In this document: piece by piece, positions 6,286 to 61,202 of the stretch | Layout: each line of letters starts with the position of its first letter | Numbering within the stretch: position 1 is the stretch's first letter | Source: Podarcis gaigeae | Taxonomy: Eukaryota | Strand: one strand, 5' to 3' | Assembly (NCBI GenBank): GCA_964106915.2 | Contig: OZ066919.1 | Length of the DNA stretch: 64,000 nucleotides | Notes under the pieces: generated by a model | Database searches by the model: none | The model's input: the letters and a program-made list of their open reading frames with translations, nothing else | Told to the model about the DNA's origin: nothing | Translations under genes and position numbers: made by a program

Positions 6286-9200
6286 ATAGCAAAATCAGTT
6301 GGCTTTGTGTGTGTGGCTCAGATTCCAACATTATGTGATCACATTGAGTGGGGGAGCTGAACTGTATGTACCTGATACCTAGCATCCATTATAAGAGCTG
6401 CAGCTGTTCTAAGTGGGAATAAGCAGGACATGGAGGGCGGTCATTGCCATAGCAGAACATTGACTGGCCTACAAGCAGTCAGATATATGTAACACAGTTC
6501 CCTCCTCAAACACTAATGAAGTATCTAAATAAGGCTTCTGTCTACCAATGAATCATTATGAAGAGCTTGTCATATCTTTTTACACTGGGCTGATGTGATA
6601 AACATAATCATCAACTGTACATTTCATTATTAAGTTTCTGACATAGAATGTTTTAAGTGACCAGCCTCCCAACACATTTCCAGAACCTGCATGCAGTGTT
6701 ATTAGAGTTATTGATGGTAGAACTTGTCTCAGTTTTATGAACCTTTACTACTGTGAGTGTTTCATGCTGCAATTATAGTTTTATGTGGATTTCTTATTTA
6801 GGTGCATGATTGTTTACCAGTCCCAGTCTTATGCACAGCTAATTTAATGTGCTTTCTTTTGGTTTGTATATGTGAAACAGCGTTAGTTCACTGCAGTTTC
6901 ACAGCAGGCACAGATAAAAGTTGGGTGCTAAAAAAGAGTTGTCTTTTAATCTAAGGATAAATTGGTTTCATAATACGGTTAAAAGCTTTGAATTTGGGAA
7001 AGTAATTACAATGCTGTAGAAATTGAAAATATGGCTAGCAGATATAAAGGTACAAATGTTGAAACTCTCAGCAAGGTGCCTGCACATATGTGTATGTAAA
7101 ATATATAATTTTGATAATTTTTGTAAAAAGAATTGGTTTCATGTTGTTGTCATGTCAAATGCCAGGCTATTTTTATCACATCACGCAGTGACTACCACAG
7201 TGTAGATACAGCCTATAGAACTGGCAACTAATTGCACATATTATTTTGTGTGAAATCATTGGTAGTAGCTGAAGCAAATGATTGAACTTTGCATTTACAT
7301 CAGGTTTATTCTAGGTGTGCTTAGAAACAGTACCGAATTAGGAAGATCATCAGATTCTCTTCTTTTCTATGTATCATCATCAACATATTCTCAATTGCAT
7401 TCGTTAGCAAGAAGGGAAAGATACAGAATGCATCTTAATTTTTCCCCATTTCCCATTATGAATTGCTTTTCAATTGGAGACAGAGAGAGAAAATATTGTC
7501 TGTGCTTGCAGTCATACTTTTGACAAATTCTTCTTGTGACTTGTAAGCAGAGCAACTTCGTATTTGGAGAGGATATGAAACTCCACAGTGGGTCTGCCCT
7601 TGCTTGTTCCAACACCATTACAGTGACATTCCTGGCTGTGAATGTGTTTTCACTCCTGCTGTTGTATCTCCCCACACCCCCAACAGTGAACCAACATATC
7701 AACTATGGCTTTAGAGAATAGCATGTATTAAGCTGGTTTACAACACAGGCTCAACCATATTAAGCAGCTATTTTATGGATTCCTTACTTTACTATTTCTT
7801 TGGCTAGGCCTTGTCTGTCAGGAAAAAAATGTCATTCACAAAATGACAATAGGTTGCTATTTATTTCTCTGTGTCATCTAAAAGCAATCATTCAAAACAA
7901 GAACTAAGGTGATCTTCTTAAGGCAAAAATGTTTTCAGAGATGAAAGCTGGCAAGGCCAATTTGTTACCACAAAACACAGTGGCAGGGTGGAGGGGAGGC
8001 CAAAGCGCCTGACTATTTCGTGAATGGGCTTATTTTCCTTTTGCATTGTGTATCAATAAAATAATATCTTGTGCAAGCAGGTTTCTTCTCAAGTCTTAGG
8101 ATTGTGTTGTTGCCTTAGCTTTCTTTGATAACCATCTGCAACAGACGCAAAACTGAAAAAGTGGGGAAATGAAGCAAAAGAGACATTGCCCTAATGCTTC
8201 AGGGATGTTATCCGTACGGGTCAGTAATCATTGCCGCTGCCTGTTTAAAGAACCAGCAGGGCAATACAGAGAGTCTTTGATTCTATCATATTATACAACT
8301 AGGAGTATTATGGCTGTAAAGGGAAAGAGAGACAAAAGGTGGACACAGAACAAAAGCCAGCAACTGAAAATCATTCACATTTACCTAACCACATCTGATA
8401 TACAGTGAAGACCAAAGGAGAAGAAGAAGAAAATAAACTAAAATGCCCTCCCCACCCCCAATGGTTAAAGATGTGCTTATTTAGCAGATATTTCAATTAC
8501 TAGGCGCCTCTTTTTTTCCTCTTTTAATTTCATTGGCTTGCTTCTCCAGGCTCCAACAGATGAGAAAGGTTTTCCTTCAGTACAGCCTGGGAGTCTGCCA
8601 AATCCAATACAGCCCAGAGGTGGGGAAGTTGCACCCCATGAAATGTTGCAGGACTCCAGCTCCCATCACTGCTGATCATTTCTTTGTCCCACACATTTCA
8701 GTGCATCACGCTGTCACTTCCCTAGCCACAAAAAGTCCATTACCTTTATTTATGTATTTTAAGAGTTGATTTGTTGCACTAGGGGTCCACTTAACTGCAC
8801 AAATCAAAATCTGTGGCATGAGCATGTGGTGGATCCTTCCTGCAAAATAGTGACAGTTGGGATACACAATAAACCAAAAAAAGGTGTGTTTTGTTTAAAA
8901 TTCATTCACTTTGATGAATTATTCCAGGAGTATAGCAAGTGCCTGAATGCAAGCACAATTGAAACGGAAATTGAAGTTTCTCGGGCACTTTGTGCCTTTT
9001 CTTAAAGTTCCCTGCATGTTTTAGACCTACTTTGAGGCTTTGCCTCAATTTTTGATGTCTTGTGTTTTGGTGATGGTATATATTTTTCGAGTCTATTTTG
9101 TTAGCTATTCTGCCTTCTTTCCCTGTTTAAAGCCAAATATTAACATTTTTACAGTAGATTTTTCTCATCACTTTCAGTCTGTGTTTTCTGGCACTTTGCA

Positions 9201-9503
9201 AAAGCTGTGAAGGTTTTGTGTCTGAGTGGTTGAAATATTCAACCACTTAAAAATCTATCATTTATATTTACCGGCACTGACTTTAACTTATGAATTACAA
9301 ATAAGATTCAATTTTACTGTAGAAATATGCCTTGATAACAATGCTGCTGAGTACATGTGGGCACCAATGGTTGTTATTAAAGTGCTTACAGCAGACAACA
9401 AGGATTTTTTTTCTTGGGTTCTAAACACTGCAGTCTAGTGCAGCTACTTAGAAGTAAGTTCACTGAGCTCCACAGAACTTATACGTAGGTATATATGCAG
9501 CGC

Positions 9504-9505
<2 letters not shown>

Positions 9506-9541
<36 letters not shown>
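9506..9541. repeat. (TG)n microsatellite
   Basis: Direct read. Confidence 0.97.
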
Positions 9542-9543
<2 letters not shown>

Positions 9544-11516
9544 ATTTAATGTGCATTTGATCTCTTTAGGGGCTTCTTTTCAAGCAGCCAGTGAAGGATT
9601 TCTTCAGAATTTGTTTGCTCTGTTGGCCTTACTAAGGACTGAAATAATGTGTTTAGTAGACAGAGATTTATCAGCAAAAACTGTTACGAATTTAGGGGAA
9701 ATGGTGGAAAAGAAATTTATTAGTTTACACATGCACCAAATATTTATCAGTTTCAGTTCTAGTGGAACTCCTCTTATTTGGCGGGGAAGCATTCACTTCT
9801 CCTCCAAGGGAAACCAGCAAAAGAAGCTTTAAAACAAACGAAGATGTTGCCTCTGTAGATTCTAAACAACAGGTGTTTCACTCTGGCCTTCAGATTGTCT
9901 AGAAATACTCTCCTAAATGTATTTATTTCATTAAATTTATATTTTGCTTGATTGTGGGGGGGGGGGGACACACCTCAAAGCGGTTTACAAAAAAAAAGAT
10001 AGGACAATGAAATTATAACTTTAAATTTTTTACAACCATAATTTAAATCATACAAAAAGTTTAAACCGTAACTTAAAACTCATACAATTATTCCTAAACA
10101 TTTAGGTAGGCTTGTCTAAATGTCAATCATTGCTACAATTTCATTGGTTGGCTAAAAGCAACGAAAGGCAGAGATAGCTACTTTCTAACCAAACAAATGA
10201 GCCTGGCAACCCAATCCTCTGATTGGCCGCTGTGGGCCACTACCACATCCGCAGCTCCTCCGCTCTTGCCAGCTAGGGTGGGAGGTGGGGAGAGCAAGAA
10301 AAATGCCTCTTTACTGTAGTCACTATTAGCACAGTGCAGACACCACACCTGATTCCTTTAATTAGGCTGTGTTTACAAAAGAAAAAAATTCTACAGGTTT
10401 ACTTGTCATCAGCAGTAGAAAAACTGAGGTTCCGAAAGATCAACAGCACATTTCTGTGCCTGAAGTGAAAAGGGAAATTTCCTAACAAGCATGTGCAAAT
10501 CATGCTGCTCCCCAGGCCTGGCTCCTGCTGTAAGAAAATATTGGGGAGCAGGTAAAAGTTAAAGTCTCTCCTACAGTATATGAGAGTTCTCAAGAAAGCA
10601 TAACAATGTTAACACTTGGAGACATGGAGGATTCAAAACTGATATTCTAGCAACACTGCTTGCTTATCTTTTGGTTATCATTGTATTATACAAATGAGAC
10701 ATGCATGGTGTTTTGTGGATTTCGATATTCCTGGATTTGAAATGCAATTTCTTACATATCAGATCTCTAATAGATTGTAATCCTTGTATGCATCTTGATC
10801 CTCTCTGCAGCTATGCACCCCAACGGAACTGCACAGATATTAGTAACCTAAGAGGGAACCAATGCCTTTCGCTGCATCTCTCCTCCTTTCTGCTCACTAA
10901 AATTAAGTGTATCTCATAATGTTATCTGTCACACTCCCAACATAACATGAGCTGGGATATGGAGTCTAATCTTAAAGATTAAGCTGGGAGGCCTTCATTC
11001 AGCAATGTTAATAAGCACAGGCATCGTTTCTCGTTAAACTGGGAGTCCAAACATGCAGTGAAGCACAATTACTTGTCAACAATGAAGTTAGGGAAACACA
11101 ATGCTTTGGTTAATTTCTCCCCACTCCCCAACCCCACCTGCATTGTTGCCCAGCAAGGCTGCCTTTCCTAGACTCCAGGTAAACTTAAACAGGAACAGTT
11201 CTATTTAAGTACAGTAGGCAGGGGGACATGCTTATTCCCCAGCCTCCATGCCCACACTGGCTTCCTCTTTCCACTTGCCTCGACAGGAACTTCCCTCTTC
11301 AAGTACTGCCCCTCGACCCAGGAGCTAACTATATGAACACTGTCCAGACAACTTTTACAACAGCTGGTATGGTATATAGATTCATGATTTGGAAAGCTTC
11401 ATGCGGCCAAGATGGTATGGCACAAAACTGGTTTGCTGCTGTATAGTGTGTCCTGGGTGCATCCACAACAATAAAGAGTCTTCTGACATTTAGAGGCTAA
11501 CATGCAGTTGTAGAGA

Positions 11517-11594
11517 TAGTAGTAGTAGTAGTAGTAGTAGTAATTTATTATTTGTACCCCACCCATCTGACTGGGTTGCCCTAGCCACTCTGAG
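11517..11594 (-). mobile_element. L2-clade LINE extreme 3' end with (CTA)n tail
   Basis: taccccacccatctgactgggttgccctagccactctg is the same terminus as at 33044. Here it abuts a (TAG)8 run. Confidence 0.75.
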
Positions 11595-11729
11595 TATATA
11601 TGGTATATAAACCGCATATATATAAACATGACGACTGTAAGCAGTAAAGTGAATTGTAGTTGGCAATCCAGTTGCTAGCCAAATGGAAAGTGATGTATGG
11701 CTCAAGTTGCCTTTGCAAAAAGAGTAAGG

Positions 11730-11818
11730 TGGCAATCCTGTCCTCACTTACCTGACAGCAAACCTCATTGGATTTAATAGGATTTAATCCTGAGTAGATA
11801 TGGTTAGGATTGCACTGT
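11730..11818. repeat. Short palindromic interspersed repeat (gcaatcct...aggattgc)
   Basis: Inverted ends gcaatcct / aggattgc. Decayed relatives are at ~31765-31850, 48025-48110 and 51110-51195. Confidence 0.55.
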
Positions 11819-14800
11819 AAGTTTGGGGAGGGGTCCTCCCTGCTTGACCAAGTAATGCACTGGTAGCACTCAGTCATGCACTGGTAGCACTTTGTATCTA
11901 CATAGTGATTATTGCTACTAGTTTCTGTACACCTACAATTTATCCTTAACAAGAATGTATTTCACACATGTCAATCAATGCCTTGCAAAAGGCCGTTTAA
12001 AGCATGATGTTTCTTTTCACCGTTTCGTTTCTTCCTGCCTTCTCATCATATTGAATGTGAATCATTTTTTATGACTACGGTTCATTTTTATTCTATTGTT
12101 ATACTACACATCACATGTCAGTGATGTAGACCAAGTCAAAATAGTTCCTTGACTATTATGAATTTATTAGAGTGATGTATGGGCCAGTTGGTTGCTTTGA
12201 ATTAGCAATATGGAATGTACAGTACCAATCAGGGCAAAGAATTTCTGGTCATACAAATAACTACGGGAAATTAGAAGTGTTTGGCCTAGGATGACTACTA
12301 ATGTTGAACAGCATAATCAGAATGTTTTGCTATAGTTCTCCCCCACGTTAGTGCACTTTCTTGAGGAAAGGGGCATTGAGAGGCTTCCTCACTTGTGATA
12401 TGGAAAGGTGTCCTAGATATAGCTGATTACTTTCCCCTTTTTTTTAACTTATTGATGAAACATTGGAAGTTGATTTATAGTAAGTCAGACCATTGGTTCA
12501 TCTGGTTCAGTATTGCCTACAGTGGTCTGGTTCTCATGTTATGGTAAGCCAGAATATGACTTACCATGACCATGCAAATGTTCTGGCTCCCAAAGGAGAG
12601 TTCATACTCACTTTGCTTCTCTCTGAGCTTTTTAGGTCAGCACAGGATGGCAGCTAAACCAAAGTTTTTCTTCGCTTGTTGTCCAAACCATGGACCATGG
12701 TTAAGGTCTCTTCTTAACCATGACTAGTAAACAAAGGTCAAACCTTCACTATGCTGACCTGAAATGCTTGGGGAGGAGCGATGCCACTGGTATTTCATCC
12801 TTGGGAGTCATCCTTGGAGATGCTAGGGACTGCATCTGGAACCTTGCATTTAAAGCATGTGATCTACCACTGGGCCACACCTCTTCCTCAAAAGGTAACT
12901 CTCTCATATGGGCCAGGAGAGTGGCAGAAGGAGGTTACAAACAGTTGGAGAAAGACATAGTAGCAGACTGTAAATATTAAACATTATTGATAGAAATTAC
13001 AGTTGCCTTCTTTCAAATATATTCCCTTTTTCTAGACTCCTAGGTTACACCACATAGCTGAAACAATCCACATCCAGTCACTATGCTACTTGCTTATTGC
13101 ATTCTATGCAACTATCTTTCTGCCACAGCACCCAGGGTGATTTACAATTTTAAAGTATTAGAGTAAGCAAATGCTGCAAATATCATCAGGCCAATTCAAG
13201 GAGCTGATGGCACTAGTTCCCTGGCCTGGGCTTCTGATTTCCCTCAGGATTTTTAGTAGCCACAGGGAAGGTTAAGATGGGGATGTCCCAACAATTATCT
13301 TAGGTCACTGAAAATCCATGTAGGAGCTGGCAGTTATGTGCTCCCTGGTCTGGCCTTATTGCATGCTTAGATCCTGTGCTCGTTCTTTGCCTGCACATGA
13401 ATTTGATCGCTGGGCATGTCAGTTTTAGGTAAACCTTAAGACTCTCTCCATTTGCGCACCATATTGTTTTAAAAAATGTGGTGCCAGTAATGGCAAATGT
13501 TTTGGGCAAGAAGGATCAGAAGCACCTCCAATGCACAAACATCTCCTTGTAGTGATTCCTCCAAATCAGTTTAGCTGGGTGGGATACAGTATCTGGAAGT
13601 TGAAGAAACTGGAAGGCGTGGAAGAAGTGGGCATCCCAAAAGAGGCCTCAAGGGTATCTTCCCATTTGCTTTGGGTTGTGTGTCTGTCACCATCTCAGAA
13701 TCAGTGCTGTATGTTGCTGTTAGTCTGGACAGCACATGATTTTGCTGTGCAGGTAGTAATGCCATGCTAGGCGCTTGTGAACTTGTAGCAATGCTCCTTG
13801 GAGATGGACCAAGGAGACTGCAAGATCTTCTATCCATTCTAGTCTAGGGAGCAAAAGGAAAGAAGAGAGGGCAACATGTGTTGGAAGGGGTTATCCCTTT
13901 TCTGTTTTGAATCCAACCCCCAAAAAGCAGGGGGGGGTGGAATTGGCAGGCACAAATATCAGCATGAATCCTGTGTGACTACATCTTACGCCAGAATTCT
14001 CTAGAACATTTTTGTTTCAGGTTAAATTGAAAAGAGGATGGAGAGAACAATCGCAGCACTTGCATTAATAAGTATCATGCTTAATATGCTAACAGCATAA
14101 TTATGCATATGGAAGTCTTTGTATTTTCAATTCCTACAAGGATTTTAATGGAAGGGGGAATTGAGCCCATAAGAGTATAAAATAGCTTATTAGCTTGTTT
14201 TTCTGTGCTTTTCCTAGACATAAAAATCCATGCTTAACATTATTAAGAACAGATTTTATCCTAATGGGGGCTAGGAGGGTCTTCATTGCCAGCCTCTTAC
14301 TTAGACATTTGCTATGTTTCCACCTTACAGAATTGTTAGTAAAAACCTACAAAATGAGACAAACTATATAGGTGGCATTTAGTTCAGCTTTCACATTGGT
14401 AATCCTTTAAACAAAAACTTGATCCAAGCAATGCTCCCAATATGATTGCCATTTACTTGTTATCTTTGTTCAAGGTCTACCAAGCAATTTCGAAACCCCA
14501 TGGTAAGGTAACTAATAAATTTTTGCACACAACATTTTAAATAAGGCACTTATAACAAGTGGTTTGCTGAAAGCCGTTTTGTTTAGCTATTGTATTGTAA
14601 AGCCATCAGTGAGCTTCCACTCCACCCCCACACCCTGAATCAAGCTAATAAAATGTCATCACAAATTTTAAAAGAAAAAGCTGTAACATCTTTTTCAAGG
14701 CTGGGTCATTTTAGGTTTTGGGAACGCTATAAGAGCACTTAAAACAATCATATTTACTTGCTTAGTTCCCTGAAAAACCATAAGTGTTATCTTGTCTTCC

Positions 14801-20957: not shown

Positions 20958-20993
20958 AAGCATACCCTCCAACCTTTCTCAGATGAAAATAGG
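20958..20993. repeat. Left half of a small tandem-unit repeat interrupted by the composite insertion
   Basis: cataccctccaacctttctcagatgaaaatagg continues at 24124 as agatgaaaatagggacatcctattc-cataccctcccacatttctctgatgaaaatgg, which is the same unit repeated. Confidence 0.7.
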
Positions 20994-21341
20994 TAAAGGT
21001 AAAGGTACCCCTGCCCGTACGGGCCAGTCTTGACAGACTCTGGGGTTGTGTGCCCATCTCACTTAAGAGGCCAGGGGCCAGCGCTGTCCGGAGACACTTC
21101 CGGTTCACGTGGCCAGCGTGACATCGCTGCTCTGGCAAGCCAGAGCCGCACACGGAAACGCCGTTTACCTTCCCGCTGGTAAGCGGTCCCTATTTATCTA
21201 CTTGCACCCGGAGGTGCTTTCGAACTGCTAGGTTGGCAGGCGCTGGGACCGAGCAACGGGAGCGCACCCCGCCGCAGGGATTCGAACCGCCGACCTTTCA
21301 ATCGGCAAGTCCTAGGCGCTGAGGCTTTAGCCCACAGCGCC
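20994..21341 (-). mobile_element. Sauria SINE (young subfamily), missing ~11 nt of its 5' end
   Basis: The reverse complement is nearly identical to the + copy at 60839-61202, with an (ACCTTT)n tail at ~20992-21006. Its 5' end stops at ggcgctgtggg, lacking gggacgcaggt. Confidence 0.95.
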
Positions 21342-23396
21342 TGAGTGCCCTTGTGAATTGGTGTCTCAACAAAGGTGACCCATCCTCGTGAACCAGGAGT
21401 GGGCCAGGACCGGGCAGTCTGAGGTAAAGGTACCATCTAGTGTCTTTTGACCGGGCATGGGCCCCGCTGCACTGAAGCTGTAAGTTTTTACGAGGGGACC
21501 CATACCTGCCTGGTCTGTTTTGGATTGACACAGTCATGCTAGCTTCAGTCAACTGCACTTCCTCCCACTTGCGTTAACCTCGGCTACCACTTCACCAACC
21601 CTCAAGGCACCAATGAAGGCGATCGCATATGCTGCGGAAAAGAGGCGGGCCTCGAACTTGGCCCAGCAGATTGACCTAAGCTTTGTGCGTATCTGAGATA
21701 GCAGCCCGTAAGAAATTGGCTTACGGTTCTAGGGGGGTTGTAGCCTGCCCCAAACCTCAATAGCTCTGCGGATCAGGAAGTAACTACACGGGACAGAGGA
21801 AAACATGGCTTTAGCAAAGAAGCTGATGGCGACTATGCGTATCTTTAAAGTTTTGGGGTCCCGTCCCAAAACATCAAGATGGAAAAGCTATTGCAGAATG
21901 TTGTCTGTGGTGGGTAGCACGCTAGGCAAAAGCCCCAATATCCCTGACCTGAAGCCCATGAGTTCCAGGTGCAAGCAACCGGAAGCGAGACATCTGAGAG
22001 CAAGACCCTTAGGGTAAGAAAGGTTGTGGATTAATCTAAACTCACCATGGGTCTTTTTGGGTACAATACCAAGGGGCGAGATATGCAGGTTTGGGAAAGG
22101 GAGGAGTACGAATGGACCAGCCACCCTCCCTGCGGCCACTTCCTTAGCTATTTTCTACTTCTGCAACCTCAAGCCTTTCCCTTACTGACATCTGGTTAGG
22201 GGAAATCCTTTGCAATTAAAGAGTCGGTTACTGGTATTCTGAAACCCTCTGACAAAACCCTTCCAACGAAAGGATGCTGTGCTTCCGTCTGGATAGCTAG
22301 ACAAGAGGTTGCGGAGAGGAGGGAGCTGGATCAGTGGAAATACTAGACCCGGAGGGTCCCTATCGTCTAGAATGGTGGAACCCCCGACCTCCCCGAAAGG
22401 GCTGCTTCTCTTTGTAACACGCTGCGGCTGGGAGTACCCCTGCACACCTCTCGCATTCGTGGGATACTTACCAGACTGCCTTGGCATGACCCCTTATTGA
22501 ATTACCAACGCACCTTGCGCTTTGGCTCCCTTCTTAAGTCTGGCTTACCCATGCGATGAGAATCTAATGGCTTCTTCTCAACATACGGGATGACCGCCAC
22601 CGACCAGATGCCCCTTCCAAATTGGTCCCAGCGTGCTTGCAGGATCCTGGAAGCCTTCCTTCAGAACTTTTATCATAGCTAACGGTGGCGGCCCCCCATA
22701 AGGCACATAGGCTGTTCTGACTCTTCTTCCGTGTTGCCCGTTTTAAACTTGCTCCTCTTACACACGTGCTCCTTCTTGGTGCGTCTTTTGCCTGACGGTT
22801 TGTCCCCCTCAGCTGTCTGAAGTCCTCCCTCCAGCTGCTGTTCCTCCTCACCGCCTGACGAGGTGCCCAATTCTGGAAGCTGGACCCAGGGCTGCTTATT
22901 CTGCGAAGGACTGGAAGAACTGGACACAACAGGGTTATTGACACAGGCCGGCGGCCTCCTCGCAGGCGACCCAATGCAGTTCTGAGGACCAGATGATGCC
23001 GAGTGAGCCTGAGACCTAGTTTGCACTGCTGCAGTTACTGTCCAAGAGCTTGGGCCTGCACCTGAGAACTGAGAATCGTTGAGGAGGTCGGCAGAGGTGC
23101 CTGGAAGGTCATCAAGCTGGGTGAGAGGCGGGCTCTCCGGGACCACCTGGGCTCTCCAGGACCACCTGGGTATCTGATATCATATCAGGGGTAGCAGCGG
23201 AGGGCATGGGGTTAGGGGATTGATTGGAAAAAACGCTACTCATAATCATCAATGAACAATCTAAATGCATTTAGGCAGTGTAAAATAGGTTATAATCCCG
23301 TCCATGTGGCGCCCCCAATGAATCACGGCTATTGGCACCCATGCAGCCTGAGGTGTGAGCTGATTCCGTTGCAGAGCGCTTCCTCTTAGGTGCCAT
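21342..23396 (-). mobile_element. Decayed, internally deleted Ngaro/DIRS-type tyrosine-recombinase retrotransposon
   Basis: Motifs occur in the expected order on the - strand. Gag-like: start MAPKRKRS (ATG at 23396), ARWDQ, and a zinc-finger remnant W*FNKGSC..KYPHECERCAG..AAAC (~22412-22512). RT N-terminus: LLSSYPD..GF..GF and GPF..LPFPNLHISPLGIVPKKTHGEFRLIHNLSYPKG (~22005-22130). RNase H end: QMSRFRLLAPG (~21964-21996). YR: FEARLFSAAYAIAFIGALRVGEVV (~21585-21657), SKTDQAG (21504-21524) and LLVHEDGSPLLRHQF. Stops and frameshifts occur throughout. Confidence 0.9.
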
Positions 23397-23644
23397 GGAT
23401 AACATGCTAAAGCTACTGCCACAAACACATGCTACCGCTTACAAGCGGTTGTACAGGGACATGTAATTGATTCTGGAAAAATAAACTAATTAATGATTGT
23501 TTTACTTATAATAAACAATGATTCCCAAGCATTCCGTTAAATGTTTAATTGTTTATGCCATAAGTATGTGCTGCGTGTGTTATTTATTACTCACTCTATA
23601 TATATTAATATATAGATGCTTCCTACTTCATATTATAATATCTC

Positions 23645-23748
23645 ATTCAATCCCCTGCAATGCAGAATATACTGGGGTCCCATACAGGGATCAAACCAGC
23701 AACCTTGGCATTATAGGCACCATGCTCTAACCAATGAGCTATCCAGGC
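23645..23748 (-). mobile_element. tRNA-Ile-derived SINE with CR1-like tail (copy 1)
   Basis: The reverse complement cctggatagctcattggttagagcatggtgcctataatgccaaggttgctggtttgatccctgtatggga resembles tRNA-Ile(AAT) and is followed by ctgcattgcagggg. Confidence 0.75.
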
Positions 23749-23751
23749 TCT

Positions 23752-23879
23752 CTAGAATTGTGTGGGACCCCAAGGGTCATTTAGTCCAACCCCTTGCGAA
23801 GCAGGAATATGTAATTGTTCCATACAGGGATCAAACCTGCAACCTTGGCATTATTGTCGCCACGCTCTAACCAACTGAG
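23752..23879 (-). mobile_element. tRNA-Ile-derived SINE with CR1-like tail (copy 2, tandem)
   Basis: Second copy of catacagggatcaaacc..gcaaccttggcattat..gctctaacca, with the tail revcomp ggggttggactaaatgacccttggggtcc. Confidence 0.75.
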
Positions 23880-25561
23880 GGTTCCGCAATATATGTAAAT
23901 TATATATTATTATAAATGAATTTTATTTTATTTTATTTGTTTATTTATATATTTATCTACAGATTTGTTCAATTAATTAATCGATTTAATCTTGGTATGT
24001 GACGTCATTCCACTTATTCTCTTTTATTATTATAATGTATATTCTCATTATGATAATTAATTAATAATTAATTTAATATTATTACTTATTCCTACTCTAA
24101 ATATCTAAATTAAGATTTAATTTAGATGAAAATAGGGACATCCTATTCCATACCCTCCCACATTTCTCTGATGAAAATGGGAATAGGAATTCTTTTGGGG
24201 ATAACATAGGAAGGGATAAGAGTAGGCGAAGCAATGTTACATTTTAGCTACACAAAAACCGGAGGTTTCTACACATGTTTGCTGGGTACACATAGCTTTC
24301 CCTACAACCACCATATTCTTATCAGACAGACAAGAGGCATTAACACAATTCAAGGACACATTTCAGCCAAACGAAAGCAGAGTGGTCAGTGGGAGAGTGC
24401 CAAGGCCCAAATAGGGAGCTACACTTGTCCCTTGAGGCTCAGGTTTCCCACCCTGCTATGTGCTTAAACTCCTAATTGTACACCTAAAAATCACAACGTG
24501 TGAAAACTCAATCTAGTAGAGGATTTAGCCCATCTATATTTAGGTAACTGGAACACAAAAGAGTTTGTTAAATGTCACAAGCGTTAGGTTAACCAACATT
24601 TTGCCTAGAAGTAGCAGTAGTTGTGACCATGCCTGCATAACTATCCTGGGAACTACAGAAGCAGGCAAAGACTTCTATAAAGCAGAACAAAACACTAGAA
24701 GAAATCTATAGGAATTTGCATGCCTTGCAAATTCAAGATTTGGCTATTTCATTGAGAACTATTAGAAAGAGCCAGTTGCAAAGGTTGGCAGATACATGGC
24801 ATTGCGAGCAAGAGACATAAATAGCAAGAGCTTAGCTGACACATTTTTATTATTCGATTCAGAAATGTGTCACACCTACTTCTACGTCCTACGGAGAGGG
24901 AATACGTGCACAAACTGGCAGCATGTACTCATATGTGCAAATTGTATTCTGCATATGCATCAACAGATGTTCAGGAATATATGGGCATTTAAATAGCATT
25001 CATTATTGGTCCATGATGCTAAGCTCTTATTAACATAAAGTGAAAACAGAAAAGATGATAAGCAGAGATACACCCTCCCTTGAGGCAATAGCAGGATGCA
25101 TTTCAGTCAATCACAAGTGGGAAAGTAAGCATTGCTGAGGCACCTTTATATTTTGATTCCCCCAGATGCAAGCTCAGAAACTGCCATATATTTGAGTAAA
25201 GTTACTTCTGTTTTCATGGGACATTATTTATATGGCAAATAAATAATGGCTAGCCACACTGTTTTTCTTGGGGGAACCTGATATAAAGTGTGAGGGAACA
25301 ACCCTTAGTGCGTTGCTACTTTCTACATATACTTTCTACCCAGTGATCTAATTAGCATGATTTTGGATTTGCTTTGGAAGCATGCCAAGCAAACCATGTT
25401 TGCATGTTTTAGGGTATCATTAAATCAGCTCTGCTTTGTCCCCCTGTGTTGAGCTAAAAGTTTTTAAGAGTTTTGATAGATACTCAGCATTTCTATACAG
25501 AATGTTGTTATTGGTATCCAGAACACCACCATCAATAGGGCGTCTATTGATTTGCATAGGA

Positions 25562-25697
25562 CAGGCATGGCCAAACTTGGCCCTCTAGATGTTTTGGGAC
25601 TACAATTCCCATCATCCTTGACCACTGGTACTGTTAGCTAGGGGTGATGGGAGTTGTAGTCCCAAAACATCTGGAGGGCTAAGTTTGGCCATGCCTG
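25562..25697. mobile_element. Palindromic hAT-type MITE
   Basis: caggcatggccaaactt ... aagtttggccatgcctg with a fold-back interior. The right TSD runs into the N gap. Confidence 0.9.
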
Positions 25698-25699
25698 GC

Positions 25700-25924
25700 N
25701 NNNNNNNNNNNNNNNNNNNNNNNNNNNNNNNNNNNNNNNNNNNNNNNNNNNNNNNNNNNNNNNNNNNNNNNNNNNNNNNNNNNNNNNNNNNNNNNNNNNN
25801 NNNNNNNNNNNNNNNNNNNNNNNNNNNNNNNNNNNNNNNNNNNNNNNNNNNNNNNNNNNNNNNNNNNNNNNNNNNNNNNNNNNNNNNNNNNNNNNNNNNN
25901 NNNNNNNNNNNNNNNNNNNNNNNN
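25700..25924. other. Assembly gap (225 N)
   Basis: Run of N. Confidence 1.
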
Positions 25925-28439: not shown

Positions 28440-28572
28440 CAGGCATGGCCAAACTTTGCCCTCCAGATGTTTTGGGACTACAACTCCCATCGTCCCTAGC
28501 TAACAGGACCAGTCAGGGATGATGGGAATTGTAGTCCCAAAACATCTGGAGGGCCAAGTCTGGCTAATACTG
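28440..28572. mobile_element. Palindromic hAT-type MITE (same family as 25562)
   Basis: caggcatggccaaac..ccagatgttttgggactacaa / ttgtagtcccaaaacatctgg. Confidence 0.88.
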
Positions 28573-29931: not shown

Positions 29932-30495
29932 CCATATTTTTCGCCCTATAGGACGCACTTTTTCCCCTCCAAAAATGAAGGGGAAATGTGTGTGCGTCCT
30001 ATGGGGCGAATGCAGGCTTTCGCTGAAGCCTGGAGCGCTAGAGGCGTCGGTGTGCACCGATACCTCTCGCTCTCCAGGCTCCTGGAAGCTATCTGCAAGC
30101 CTTGCACGCCCGGGGGAACTCCGCAGCATGGGGAGCCCTGCAGGAGTTCCCCGCTGGGCTCCCCACGCTGTGGATAGCAGCCTGCCGCCTGGCGGGTGGG
30201 GCGCCCTGAAGCAGAGCGCCCTGCGCGCCGGACAGACATCCGCAGCATGGGGAGCCCTGCAGGAGTTCCCCGCAGGCCTCCCCACGCTGCGGATAGCAGC
30301 CTGCCACCTGGCGCGCGTGGCACCCTGAAGTAGAGCGCCCCGTGCGCCGAACAGACATTGGCCAGACCCACAAGCTCAGGGGACAGCGGGGAGGCGCAGC
30401 GCCGCCATCCCACTGTTCCCCGACCTGGTTTTGGCGCCCCCCCAAAAAAGTAGGTGCGTCCTATGGGACGGAGTCCTATGGGACAAAAAATACGG
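29932..30495. mobile_element. Tc1/mariner (Tc2/pogo-like) non-autonomous element with internal tandem duplication
   Basis: TA-cc(a/g)tattttt..ccctatagga TIR and tcctatgggacaaaaaatacgg-TA. The GC/CpG-rich interior has two ~119-bp units starting at 30120 and 30239. Confidence 0.85.
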
Positions 30496-41251: not shown

Positions 41252-42520
41252 GTAAGTCAGTTTCGCAGGAACTAAAAATGGTCCCAGATTACGCCCCGCC
41301 GCCTCCGGTCCTTAGGAACTGTGAAGCGAAACCAGCAGACCTGGCTGGGAGTTGTCGGGAGAGACAGACAAGAAAGACCCCGGGCTTCCTTTGGGTCGGG
41401 TGATTTCAGTCTCTGTGCAGCTTGCCCTATTTATTTATGGGCATTTTTGCTCCATGGGAAAATTTCGCAAGGGGGTCTTGGGCTGAAACCTTGTCAAGGA
41501 AGAGAAGCAAAGGAACTTCCCGCCTGCCTTATTTTTAAATAGCAAATAGGTTCACATGCCATTATGATGGCTGTTGGTGTTCGGCTGAACCGACTTGCCT
41601 TGCAAGAAGGGATCGCGGGCGCTTAGGGCAATAATCACGGGCAGGCATTGCTCTCTCTCCCACCTAAAAAACTGCAAAACGTGGGAGCAGTGGGAATGGC
41701 AGCGAAAGGGTAAGCCGGAAAAGTGAGAGGAGGATAAGAGACAGGGGCTTAGGAAGGCAGAAAGCAGAGTGTGTGTGGAGGGGGGGGGTCAAATTCAGGA
41801 GGAAGCTGCACTTTTCAAGAGGCTTCTCTGCTTTGGAACTTGCAGGGGCTGGAAATAGACGGTTCCTCCCCTCCCCACCCCGGCTTCTTCCGCCACCCCA
41901 GAGATTAAAATGGTAGCGCTGGGTGGCACCCGCCCGCCCGCACCAACCTGCAGGGGTCTCTCCATGGAGAGGAGACCCAACCCCTTCCAGAAGAAGTTAA
42001 AACTTGCAAAGGCTACCAAGACGCGGAGCTGCATTCTCCTCACACCCACCCGCATCCCCGCCATAAAAAAAGGACGGGAAACTTGCAAAAAAAGGGGCTG
42101 CCTCACATGAGTTAGGCTGGCGCGGGTGTGGAGAGAGAAAGAGAGAGAGAGAGAGACGCCGAGCTTTTATTGACAACAATCAGAACTCCTCCAACAGTGG
42201 CTGGTTGCAAAGGCGAGGCGGGAAGCGGCGAGGCGCGCGCGGGGCGGGGGCTGGTGAGGCGGGAAGGAGAGCGGCGGGGAAGCGGGAGACCTGGAGGGGC
42301 GGCGACTGAGCCGCGAGGGACCCCGGCGACAGTGCTGCCGCCTGAGCCGCCCGCGCGCAACGCCTCCTGGCCGCCGCCGCCGCCGTTTCCCGCTCCGCCA
42401 TCTCCACCACGTCCGGCCTCGGGCTCCGCAGCGCTCCGCTCGCCGCCTGCCTGGTGGGGAGCGCGCTCTCCCCTGCGCACGGCGGGTTCTCTCAGCGTGT
42501 CTCCTTGTCCCTCTTTTCAG
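41252..42520 (+). other. ST6GALNAC5: ST6GALNAC5 intron 1 (1269 nt, GT-AG)
   Basis: Bounded by GTAAGT and TTTCAG. Splicing gives the continuous frame MKTLM|RHGLAV. Confidence 0.9.
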
Positions 42521-42811
42521 CGCCATGGGCTGGCTGTGTCTTTAGCGCTCACCACCATGTGCACTAGCTTGTTGCTCATGTATGGTAGCATCGGTGGCGG
42601 AGGCGGAGGCGCTGGTAGTGGCGGCGGAGGAGAAGGAGGCGGCAGTAGCGGCGACGGAAGCCCGAAAGAGCAAAGCCAAGCGCAGCAGCAGCAGCAGGTG
42701 GCGGTGACGGCGAGCCAGAAGCCGGAGAGCTCTCAGCAACTGGGCGGCAGCGGGCAGAGGCGCCTCCCCGACCGCCCCTTGGAAGGCTACATCGGGGTCC
42801 TGGACCACAAG
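42521..42811 (+). CDS. ST6GALNAC5: ST6GALNAC5 coding exon 2 (signal-anchor and stem region, 97 codons)
   Basis: A polypyrimidine tract and acceptor (ctccttgtccctcttttcAG) end at 42520. The exon translates RHGLAVSLALTTMCTSLLLMYGSIGG...QQQQQ...RPLEGYIGVLDHK, matching mammalian RHGLAVCLALTTMCTSLLLVYSSLGG...polyQ...RPLDGYLGVADHK. Donor GTGAGC is at 42812; length is 291 nt, phase 0-0. Confidence 0.96.
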
Positions 42812-42993
42812 GTGAGCGCAGGCGGAGAGGTGCGGGGGGAGGGGGAGGAGGCGAAGGGTGGACAAGGGCGCCGAAGAGGGAGCTCCTCGGGGCCCTTGGC
42901 TTGGGCCGACTGATGAAAGTTCTCCGGGAAAAAGGTGTGTGTAATAGACATTTCTGTACCATGAACTATGGGGAAATAGCATGGGAGTTAAGG

Positions 42994-43343
42994 TAAGGGA
43001 AAGGGACCCCTGACCATTAGGTCCAGTTGTGGCCGACTCTGGGGTTGCAGCGCTCATCTTGCTTTATTGGCTGAGGGAGCAGGCGTACAGCTTCCGGGTC
43101 ATGTGCCCAGCATGACTAAGCCGCTTCTGGCAAACCAGAGCAGCGCACGGAAATGCTGTTTACCTTCCTGGCAGAGTGGTACCTATTTATCTACTTGCAC
43201 TTTGACATTCTTTCGAACTGCTAGGTTGGCAGGAGCAGGGACCGGGCAAGGGGATCTCACCCTGTGGGGGGGATTCGAACTGCTGACCTTCTGATCGGCA
43301 AGTCCTAGGCTCTGTGGTTTAACCCACAGCGCCACCTGCATCC
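42994..43343 (-). mobile_element. Sauria SINE (different, more diverged subfamily), full length, 11-bp TSD
   Basis: Contains the head (cccacagcgccacctgcatcc), the core ttcgaactgctaggttggcagg and the tail taagggaaagggacccc. TSD gggagttaagg is at 42983-42993 and 43344-43354. Confidence 0.93.
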
Positions 43344-60838: not shown

Positions 60839-61202
60839 GGGACGCAGGTGGCGCTGTGGGTTAAAGCCTCAGCGCCTAGGACTTGCCGATCGAAAGGTCG
60901 GCGGTTCGAATCCCTGTGGCGGGGTGCGCTCCCGCTGCTCGGTCCCAGCGCCTGCCAACCTAGCAGTTCGAAAGCACCTCCGGGTGCAAGTAGATAAATA
61001 GGGACCGCTTACCAGCGGGAAGGTAAACGGCGTTTCCGTGTGCGGCTCTGGCTCGCCAGATGCAGCTTCGTCACGCTGGCCACGTGACCCGGAAGTGTCT
61101 CCGGACAGCGCTGGCCCCTGGCCTCTTGAGTGAGATGGGCGCACAACCCCAGAGTCTGTCAAGACTGGCCCGTACGGGCAGGGGTACCTTTACCTTTACC
61201 TT
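60839..61202 (+). mobile_element. Sauria SINE, full length, young, 14-bp TSD
   Basis: Has the gggacgcaggtggcgctgtggg head with a B-box ggttcgaatcc, retained CpGs and an (ACCTTT)3 tail. TSD tatgtatacagatg is at 60824-60837 and 61203-61216. Confidence 0.96.

What the first reader, a model, noticed from the sequence alone, without database searches (positions are those of the whole stretch)
20981..24136. 3.1-kb chimeric retro-insertion: a Sauria SINE carrying Ngaro/DIRS and tRNA-SINE cargo inside one target-site duplication
Seen: the 13-mer agatgaaaatagg sits at 20981-20993, directly against the SINE (ACCTTT)n tail, and recurs at 24124-24136 rather than at the SINE's own 5' end (21341). Removing the interval rebuilds a continuous small repeat (cataccctcc..tttctc-agatgaaaatagg-gacatcctattc-cataccctcc..). 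Everything between lies on the - strand in this order: AT-rich patch, two tRNA-Ile SINEs, Ngaro gag/RT/RH/YR remnant, Sauria SINE, tail. The other two Sauria SINEs in the window have TSDs (11 and 14 bp) tight against their ends. Known: Sauria SINEs are mobilised by BovB/RTE-type LINE machinery, and YR elements do not create long TSDs. Inference: one target-primed event began on the SINE tail and copied ~2.8 kb of extra sequence, by 5' transduction or template switching. That would be a route for SINE-driven shuffling of unrelated DNA in lizards.
Basis: partly seen in the sequence, partly recalled or inferred. Interest (0 to 1): 0.8.

Follow-up and report, generated by a model that had tools for sequence, protein, structure and literature searches.

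The report
SINE plus Ngaro fragment, one duplication
A young lizard SINE and a 2.8-kb internal piece of a dead Ngaro-type jumping gene lie head to tail inside one 13-bp target duplication. They most likely arrived together in one LINE-driven copying event, which is well known for mammalian L1 but little documented for BovB/Sauria SINEs.

Summary
The 13-mer is exact at 20981-20993 and 24124-24136. One copy abuts the (ACCTTT)n tail of a minus-strand Sauria SINE (20994-21341). The other abuts the far end of the extra DNA. Such a recurrence occurs at 8 in 10,000 positions of this window.

New here: the "cargo" is one thing, not three. Window 21343-24069 is colinear (91-92%) with part of a 4.9-kb Ngaro-like element found twice in Podarcis lilfordi (L001, L002). 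The AT-rich tracts and the tRNA-Ile-like SINE pair are already inside that element. The window copy lacks both ends of the element. It breaks in the recombinase ORF exactly where the SINE begins. The SINE itself lacks its first 11-12 nt, and one filler base joins the two. No remainder of the element lies elsewhere in the window.

This fits one BovB-type target-primed event (about 0.7). I could not decide between a read-through donor transcript (0.4) and a template jump (0.3).

First-stage notes list similar unchecked candidates elsewhere in this genome. Verdict: a credible new member of a known kind, of moderate interest.

The parts
20961..20993 (+). Host flank: first unit of a 45-bp tandem repeat. 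Its last 13 nt (20981-20993) are the left copy of the target-site duplication.
20994..21341 (-). Young Sauria SINE with an (ACCTTT)n tail at 20994-21009. It lacks the first 11-12 nt of the family. The 3 nt CCT/AGG at the tail-duplication border could belong to either, so the effective duplication is 10-13 bp.
   Evidence: tail and TSD habits in PMC13295347
21342..21342 (-). Single filler base at the junction (A on the sense strand). It matches neither the SINE family nor the Ngaro-like family.
   Evidence: compared with L001/L002 and with the SINE copies
21343..21961 (-). Tyrosine-recombinase part of the Ngaro-like fragment. It is cut off just before the HSFRIG (HxxR) box that L001 and L002 still carry. 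It equals L001 12005-11382 at 92%.
21959..23440 (-). Reverse-transcriptase N-terminal remnant (ORF 21888-22139) and gag-like region (ORFs within 22182-23270). The reading frames are broken. The RT core is deleted, as in L001.
   Evidence: Atlas lead
23441..23647 (-). AT-rich tract inside the element family, also present in L001 and L002.
23648..23879 (-). Tandem pair of tRNA-Ile-like SINE units at 23648-23738 and 23787-23879. The same pair sits at the same place in L001 (9258-9485) and in L002.
   Evidence: (Rfam tRNA, 28.7 bits, at 23684-23741)
23880..24123 (-). AT-rich tract that forms the 5' end of the fragment. Homology to L001 is alignable up to 24069 and to L002 up to 24090. The family continues about 780 bp further upstream in L001 and L002, but not here.
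24124..24192 (+). Right copy of the 13-bp duplication (24124-24136), then a 12-nt spacer and the second unit of the host tandem repeat.

Best explanation
The whole 3.1 kb was written into the chromosome in one target-primed reverse transcription by the BovB (RTE-clade) LINE machinery. That the whole block sits inside one duplication is shown; that it was written in one event, and by BovB, is inferred. Inferred steps: the endonuclease nicked the plus strand after 20993. The end ...AGG-3' paired with the CCU of the SINE tail. The reverse transcriptase copied the SINE and then kept going for 2.78 kb into sequence of a dead, non-autonomous Ngaro-like element. It stopped inside that element's AT-rich tract. 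A second nick 13 nt away then produced the duplication. My preferred version is a read-through transcript of a donor locus, that is, a 5' transduction. In that donor, a slightly 5'-truncated young SINE had earlier inserted, in sense orientation, into the recombinase ORF of a decayed Ngaro-like copy. The enzyme started at the embedded SINE tail. This version explains why the Ngaro sequence breaks exactly at the SINE. It also explains why the extra DNA looks like ordinary decayed genomic sequence rather than an abundant cellular RNA. All single-event versions together I put at about 0.7. This version alone I put at 0.4.
For: The exact 13-bp duplication brackets the block, and its chance rate is 8e-4. 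The SINE tail abuts the left copy, and no duplication lies at the SINE 5' end. Both parts lie on the same strand. The cargo equals L001 9058-12005 and L002 9333-11980 only. It therefore lacks both termini of a family whose borders are sharp at L001 8283/13196 and L002 8148/16982. An element that has lost both ends cannot have entered by its own recombinase. No remainder of the element lies left of the SINE or anywhere else in the window. The flanks rebuild a host tandem repeat. The SINE is young, with 6 private changes against 4 in its sister copy and CpG o/e of 0.85. The cargo is decayed, with CpG o/e of 0.50, broken frames and a private 122-bp deletion. The template was therefore a dead genomic copy. 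Tail type and duplication length fit published Sauria SINE behaviour (PMC13295347).
Against: No donor locus and no empty orthologous site were seen. Protein-level searches found no second copy of the SINE/Ngaro junction, but they cover few lizard sequences, so this says little. The published Tn-TA target signature is not evident at this site, nor at the putative donor break. The SINE is 5'-truncated, whereas both other SINE copies in this window are full length. Starting reverse transcription at an internal SINE tail in a longer RNA is assumed from my recollection of eel UnaL2 work. It was not tested for BovB. The CpG contrast between SINE and cargo would also fit an older resident fragment.
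Confidence: 0.4

Rival explanations
1. One target-primed event with a template jump. The reverse transcriptase copied free SINE RNA to within 11-12 nt of its 5' end and added one untemplated base. It then jumped to a second RNA, a transcript of a dead Ngaro-like copy, and copied 2.78 kb of it. This is the U6/L1 type of chimeric retrocopy.
For: It shares the anatomy of the best explanation. The single filler base and the absence of microhomology at 21342 fit end-to-end jumping by non-LTR reverse transcriptases. Chimeras of this build are documented for L1 and for a fungal LINE (PMC2104539, PMC4476161, bioRxiv 10.1101/2025.02.02.635956).
Against: Known jump partners are mostly abundant small RNAs or mRNAs. 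Here the acceptor would be a rare transcript of a decayed element, entered at an internal point of an ORF with no evident RNA end there. No sign of splicing was found: the 122-bp gap against L001 is not GT-AG.
Confidence: 0.3
2. Two steps, or capture of DNA. The SINE inserted with an ordinary 13-bp duplication. Either at the 5' joining step or later at a break, a DNA fragment of an Ngaro-like element was ligated in or copied in between the SINE 5' end and the right-hand duplication. The fragment could have been extrachromosomal cDNA, or the copying could have been templated repair synthesis.
For: The SINE has lost 11-12 nt at exactly this junction, and there is one filler base. Both are typical of end joining. 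The SINE looks fresher than the cargo, with CpG o/e of 0.85 against 0.50.
Against: A later break would have had to remove the SINE 5' end exactly up to, but not into, the duplication. A captured fragment has only an even chance of lying in the same orientation. A fragment lacking both element termini cannot use the element's own recombinase.
Confidence: 0.12
3. Independent insertions with a chance repeat. The Ngaro fragment was resident, the SINE landed beside it without making a duplication (with a target deletion), and the second 13-mer is coincidence.
For: Another exact 13-mer pair of no obvious meaning exists in the same region, at 20997-21009 and 21422-21434. The host flank is itself a small repeat that carries a near-copy of the 13-mer at 24169-24181.
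Against: The position-specific chance is about 8e-4. The second copy sits exactly at the end of the foreign DNA. The two flanks join into a clean 45-bp tandem repeat. No further Ngaro sequence lies beyond the SINE.
Confidence: 0.05
4. Assembly artefact that joins unrelated repeats.
For: An N-gap lies 1.5 kb to the right, at 25700-25924. The region is repeat-rich.
Against: A misjoin would not create an exact duplication placed at both outer borders, nor flanks that fit together. The gap is outside the feature.
Confidence: 0.03

Closest known systems
L1 5' transductions and SVA 5' transductions (mammals)
   Same: Upstream donor sequence is carried with the retroelement inside one target-site duplication, in the same orientation, and 5'-truncated at a variable point.
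   Different: Here the mobile 3' module is a tRNA-derived SINE served by an RTE-clade (BovB) LINE. It ends in an (ACCTTT)n tail rather than poly(A). No donor locus has been identified.
Template-switch chimeric retrocopies (U6/L1, Alu/L1 and mRNA/L1 in mammals; MINE chimeras in Magnaporthe; PMC2104539, PMC4476161, bioRxiv 10.1101/2025.02.02.635956)
   Same: Two co-oriented RNA-derived parts are fused directly, with one duplication around both. The 3' part carries the LINE-specific tail and is 5'-truncated.
   Different: The 5' part is a 2.8-kb internal piece of a decayed tyrosine-recombinase retroelement, not a small abundant RNA or an mRNA. The LINE clade also differs.
Sauria SINE / Bov-B LINE pair of squamates (PMC13295347)
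   Same: The tail is (ACCTTT)n, the duplication is 10-13 bp, and the SINE is highly similar to other copies in the window.
   Different: The 5' copy of the duplication lies 2.8 kb beyond the SINE's 5' end. The Tn-TA target signature is not evident at this one site.
Ngaro-like YR retrotransposons with an SGNH hydrolase ORF (PMC9210276)
   Same: The family copies in L001 and L002 show the order gag-like, RT remnant, YR, GDSL/SGNH hydrolase.
   Different: The family is a deletion derivative without an RT core. It carries an AT-rich region with a tRNA-Ile-like SINE pair in its 5' part. Split direct repeats were not detected. The window copy has neither end.

Membership tests
LINE-mediated single-event composite insertion (5' transduction or template-switch chimera) | One target-site duplication around the whole composite and none at the internal junction | tested here: met
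LINE-mediated single-event composite insertion (5' transduction or template-switch chimera) | Both parts in the same orientation, with the LINE/SINE-type tail directly against the 3' duplication | tested here: met
LINE-mediated single-event composite insertion (5' transduction or template-switch chimera) | Both parts arrived at the same time (empty orthologous or allelic site with one copy of the target) | not testable with these tools
Flank ORFs are not on record. No annotated gene lies within 10 kb to anchor a look-up.
5' transduction | A donor locus with the identical SINE/flank junction in other flanks | not testable with these tools
   Only protein-level searches were possible. They found no second junction, but they cover few lizard sequences.
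Template-switch chimeric retrocopy | The 5' part is demonstrably RNA-derived (full-length small RNA, spliced mRNA, or a defined RNA 3' end at the junction) | tested here: inconclusive
   There is no splice signature: the 122-bp gap is not GT-AG. The junction lies inside an ORF.
Sauria SINE | (ACCTTT)n tail, tRNA-related head, and close similarity to other family copies | tested here: met
   PMC13295347. Sharing of the 3' end with Bov-B was not tested here.
Ngaro-like YR retrotransposon (the cargo's family) | Tyrosine recombinase ORF | tested here: met
   Pfam Phage_integrase gives E 5.6e-6 (L001) and 1.2e-5 (L002), just under the gathering score. The HSFRIG box is visible, and the SAM-like N-domain gives E 3e-3. 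In the window only the part before the box remains.
Ngaro-like YR retrotransposon (the cargo's family) | RT/RNase H ORF | tested here: inconclusive
   Pfam gives no hit. N-terminal RT motifs are seen by eye in L002 10458-11159. The Atlas gives only a lead, an RVT_1 cluster at 0.89. The RT core is deleted in the window and in L001.
Ngaro-like YR retrotransposon (the cargo's family) | SGNH/GDSL hydrolase ORF after the recombinase, and no methyltransferase | tested here: met
   L001 12359-12796 hits Lipase_GDSL_2 at E 8.4e-7. The expected order is given in PMC9210276. This part is not in the window fragment.
Ngaro-like YR retrotransposon (the cargo's family) | Split direct repeats (A1 ... B1 A2 B2) | tested here: not met
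   Self-comparison of L001 shows no terminal repeats within 8283-13196. The name therefore means 'Ngaro-like by ORF content', not proven membership.

The most novel reading that the evidence does not exclude
BovB/Sauria-SINE particles in lacertids may regularly carry kilobase-sized upstream or foreign RNA into new sites. This SINE-tailed Ngaro fragment could then be a copy, or a founder, of a composite SVA-like non-autonomous retrotransposon that moves on the SINE's 3' module.
Probability: 0.07. Interest if true: 0.6.

Novelty: new member of a known kind. Interest (0 to 1): 0.35.

Why it matters
If confirmed, this would be a clean case of a stringent, RTE-clade LINE/SINE pair moving 2.8 kb of non-SINE sequence in one event. 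So far that behaviour is documented mainly for mammalian L1 and SVA, and for a fungal LINE. It would make SINE-tail-driven sequence duplication in squamates countable genome-wide, by searching for SINEs whose 5' duplication copy is displaced. It also bears on how composite SINEs and SVA-like elements arise. As a single unverified locus whose cargo is dead repeat DNA, its direct biological consequence is probably nil.

Tried and rejected
2. The search of earlier findings by sequence was blank.
3. Pfam on the window's short ORFs gave nothing useful. Family identity came only from the longer ORFs of L001 and L002.
4. The ORF that spans the SINE/Ngaro junction was searched for a second copy of the junction. 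Only a 50%-identical relative on a 991-bp contig came back.
5. Exact look-ups of two flank ORFs, meant to reach other assemblies of the locus, were not on record.
6. I looked for an anchor gene to fetch the orthologous region. The only clear exon, at 42558-42811, is 18 kb away, beyond the 10-kb flank. A single exon also cannot pass the length filter of the word search. I therefore dropped this route and did not spend the large protein search on it.
7. I tested whether the L001 or L002 copies are likewise fused to a LINE inside one duplication. Same-strand LINE ORFs follow both copies, but no flanking duplication was found.
8. I tested for intron loss in the cargo as proof of an RNA origin. The result was negative.
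9. I looked for the published Tn-TA target signature. It is not evident at this site, at the two other SINEs, or at the putative donor break.
10. DNA-transposon capture was rejected. There are no terminal inverted repeats, and as far as I know no DNA-transposon superfamily makes a 13-bp duplication.
11. The hypothesis that a SINE inserted into a resident Ngaro copy was rejected. No remainder of the element lies on the other side of the SINE.
Full report
**Observation**

The 13-mer AGATGAAAATAGG occurs exactly at 20981-20993 and 24124-24136 and extends in neither direction. In this window, only 49 of 58,751 positions (8e-4) have their left-hand 13-mer recurring 300-5000 bp downstream. That count includes real repeats and low-complexity runs.

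The left copy abuts the (ACCTTT)n tail of a minus-strand Sauria SINE at 20994-21341. This SINE is 96.6% identical to the copy at 60850-61201 and 77% to the copy at 42991-43333. Those two copies carry tight duplications of about 12-13 bp and 9-11 bp. The focal SINE has none at its 5' end.

Deleting 20994-24136 joins two units of a 45-bp host tandem repeat. The tail type and duplication length agree with a published survey of Sauria SINEs, which includes Podarcis muralis (PMC13295347). The Tn-TA target signature described there is not evident at this site.

**The SINE**

- It is young. Against its sister copy, polarised by the older copy, it has 6 private changes while the sister has 4.
- Its CpG o/e is 0.85, against 0.45 for the old copy and about 0.2 for the flanks.
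- It is not complete. It lacks the first 11-12 nt that both other copies share.

**The cargo**

The 155-aa ORF at 22679-23146 (minus strand) matched two annotated proteins of Podarcis lilfordi at 89% and 80%. Their loci are L001 and L002, both on OX395145.1.

- Window 21343-24069 is colinear with L001 12005-9058 at 91-92%. It also matches L002 11980-9333, with extra gaps.
- The AT-rich tracts and the tandem pair of tRNA-Ile-like SINE units lie inside this shared block in both loci. Rfam scores one unit at 28.7 bits against the tRNA model.
- L001 and L002 stay homologous well beyond the window's fragment on both sides. The homology ends sharply at L001 8283 and 13196, and at L002 8148 and 16982. 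The flanks beyond those borders are unrelated, so these are independent copies of one element of about 4.9 kb.
- The element's ORFs run in this order: gag-like, an N-terminal reverse-transcriptase remnant, a tyrosine recombinase, and a GDSL/SGNH hydrolase. Pfam scores the recombinase at Phage_integrase E 5.6e-6 and the hydrolase at E 8.4e-7. The recombinase also has a SAM-like N-domain.
- That is the Ngaro-like ORF order (PMC9210276). I found no split direct repeats, and the reverse-transcriptase assignment is only a lead.
- The window copy and L001 share a deletion of the RT core relative to L002. The window has a further private 122-bp gap that is not an intron.

**The junctions**

On the sense (minus) strand, the Ngaro sequence runs up to ...GGGCACTC (21350-21343). 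One base follows that fits neither partner (21342). Then the SINE begins at GGCGCTGTGGG.

In L001 and L002 the recombinase ORF continues past this point into the HSFRIG box and then the hydrolase ORF. The window lacks all of that, about 1.19 kb. At the other end, the fragment stops inside the element's AT-rich tract and lacks about 780 bp of upstream element sequence. No other piece of the element exists anywhere in the window.

**Inference**

- An element that has lost both termini cannot have entered by its own recombinase.
- A SINE inserted into a resident copy would leave the rest of that copy on its other side, and it would have its own duplication. Neither is seen.
- The simplest reading is one BovB-type target-primed event. 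The plus strand is nicked after 20993. The AGG end pairs with the CCU of the tail. Synthesis runs through the SINE and on for 2.78 kb, stops in the AT-rich tract, and a second nick 13 nt away creates the duplication.
- I put this single-event reading at about 0.7.

**Which single-event version**

The two single-event versions could not be separated.

I lean to a read-through donor transcript, that is 5' transduction (0.4), for three reasons:
- The extra DNA is decayed genomic-type sequence, with CpG o/e of 0.50, broken frames and private deletions.
- Its break point is then simply the place where the donor SINE had inserted.
- Known template-jump partners are mostly abundant small RNAs or mRNAs.

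A template jump (0.3) fits the single filler base and the lack of microhomology. It has good precedent for L1 and for a fungal LINE (PMC2104539; PMC4476161; bioRxiv 10.1101/2025.02.02.635956).

The remaining readings are:
- DNA capture or a two-step history: 0.12
- A chance repeat next to a duplication-less SINE insertion: 0.05
- Misassembly: 0.03

**Limits**

I therefore have no allele, copy-number or long-read evidence.
- No orthologous locus or donor could be fetched. The junction ORF found only a distant relative, flank ORFs are not on record, and the nearest clear exon is 18 kb away.
- The absence of a second junction copy in the protein searches says little, because few lizard sequences are covered.

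**Context and novelty**

First-stage notes on other parts of this genome list similar unchecked candidates:
- A Sauria SINE with a 126-bp 5' extension inside its duplication
- A BovB insertion carrying foreign DNA
- A gene fragment upstream of an RTE derivative

I did not test these. If real, they suggest the phenomenon recurs in this genome.

The kind of event is known, as LINE-mediated transduction or chimeric retrocopies. What would be new is an instance driven by an RTE-clade SINE in a lizard, with a tyrosine-recombinase retroelement fragment as passenger. Interest is moderate.

Noticed in passing
window 21422-21434 and 20997-21009: The last 13 nt of the SINE (tail plus end; AGGTAAAGGTACC on the plus strand) recur exactly inside the cargo, 80 nt from the junction. 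There they encode conserved recombinase residues (DTRWYLYL), which are also present in L001. This is probably chance, but it mimics the SINE tail inside the Ngaro RNA.
   Followed up: partly
L001 8283-13196; L002 8148-16982; window 21343-24123: A non-autonomous Ngaro-like family carries an AT-rich region with a tandem pair of tRNA-Ile-like SINE units in its 5' part in all three copies. The window copy and L001 share an RT-core deletion that L002 lacks, so a deletion derivative has spread.
   Followed up: partly
L001 13201-14496; L002 17067-17627: Same-strand LINE reverse-transcriptase ORFs start within 5 bp (L001) and 85 bp (L002) of the 3' end of the Ngaro-like copies. No common flanking duplication was found, so they may simply be neighbours.
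   Followed up: partly
L002 12594-16394: The hydrolase ORF of the L002 copy is interrupted by a 3.8-kb insertion with direct terminal repeats and retrovirus-like gag/pol ORFs on the opposite strand. I only observed it.
   Followed up: no
window 42100-42900: A CpG island (65% GC) holds a probable first coding exon on the plus strand, from the ATG at 42558 to a GT donor after 42811. The peptide is rich in glycine and glutamine. No further exon is evident up to 64000. The gene was not identified.
   Followed up: partly
window 30120-30358: A GC-rich 119-bp unit is repeated twice in tandem at 90% identity. It produces overlapping ORFs on both strands.
   Followed up: no
window 25562-25679 and 28440-28554; N-run 25700-25924: A roughly 120-bp direct repeat pair lies 2.9 kb apart. 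Its left copy ends 20 bp before the assembly gap.
   Followed up: no
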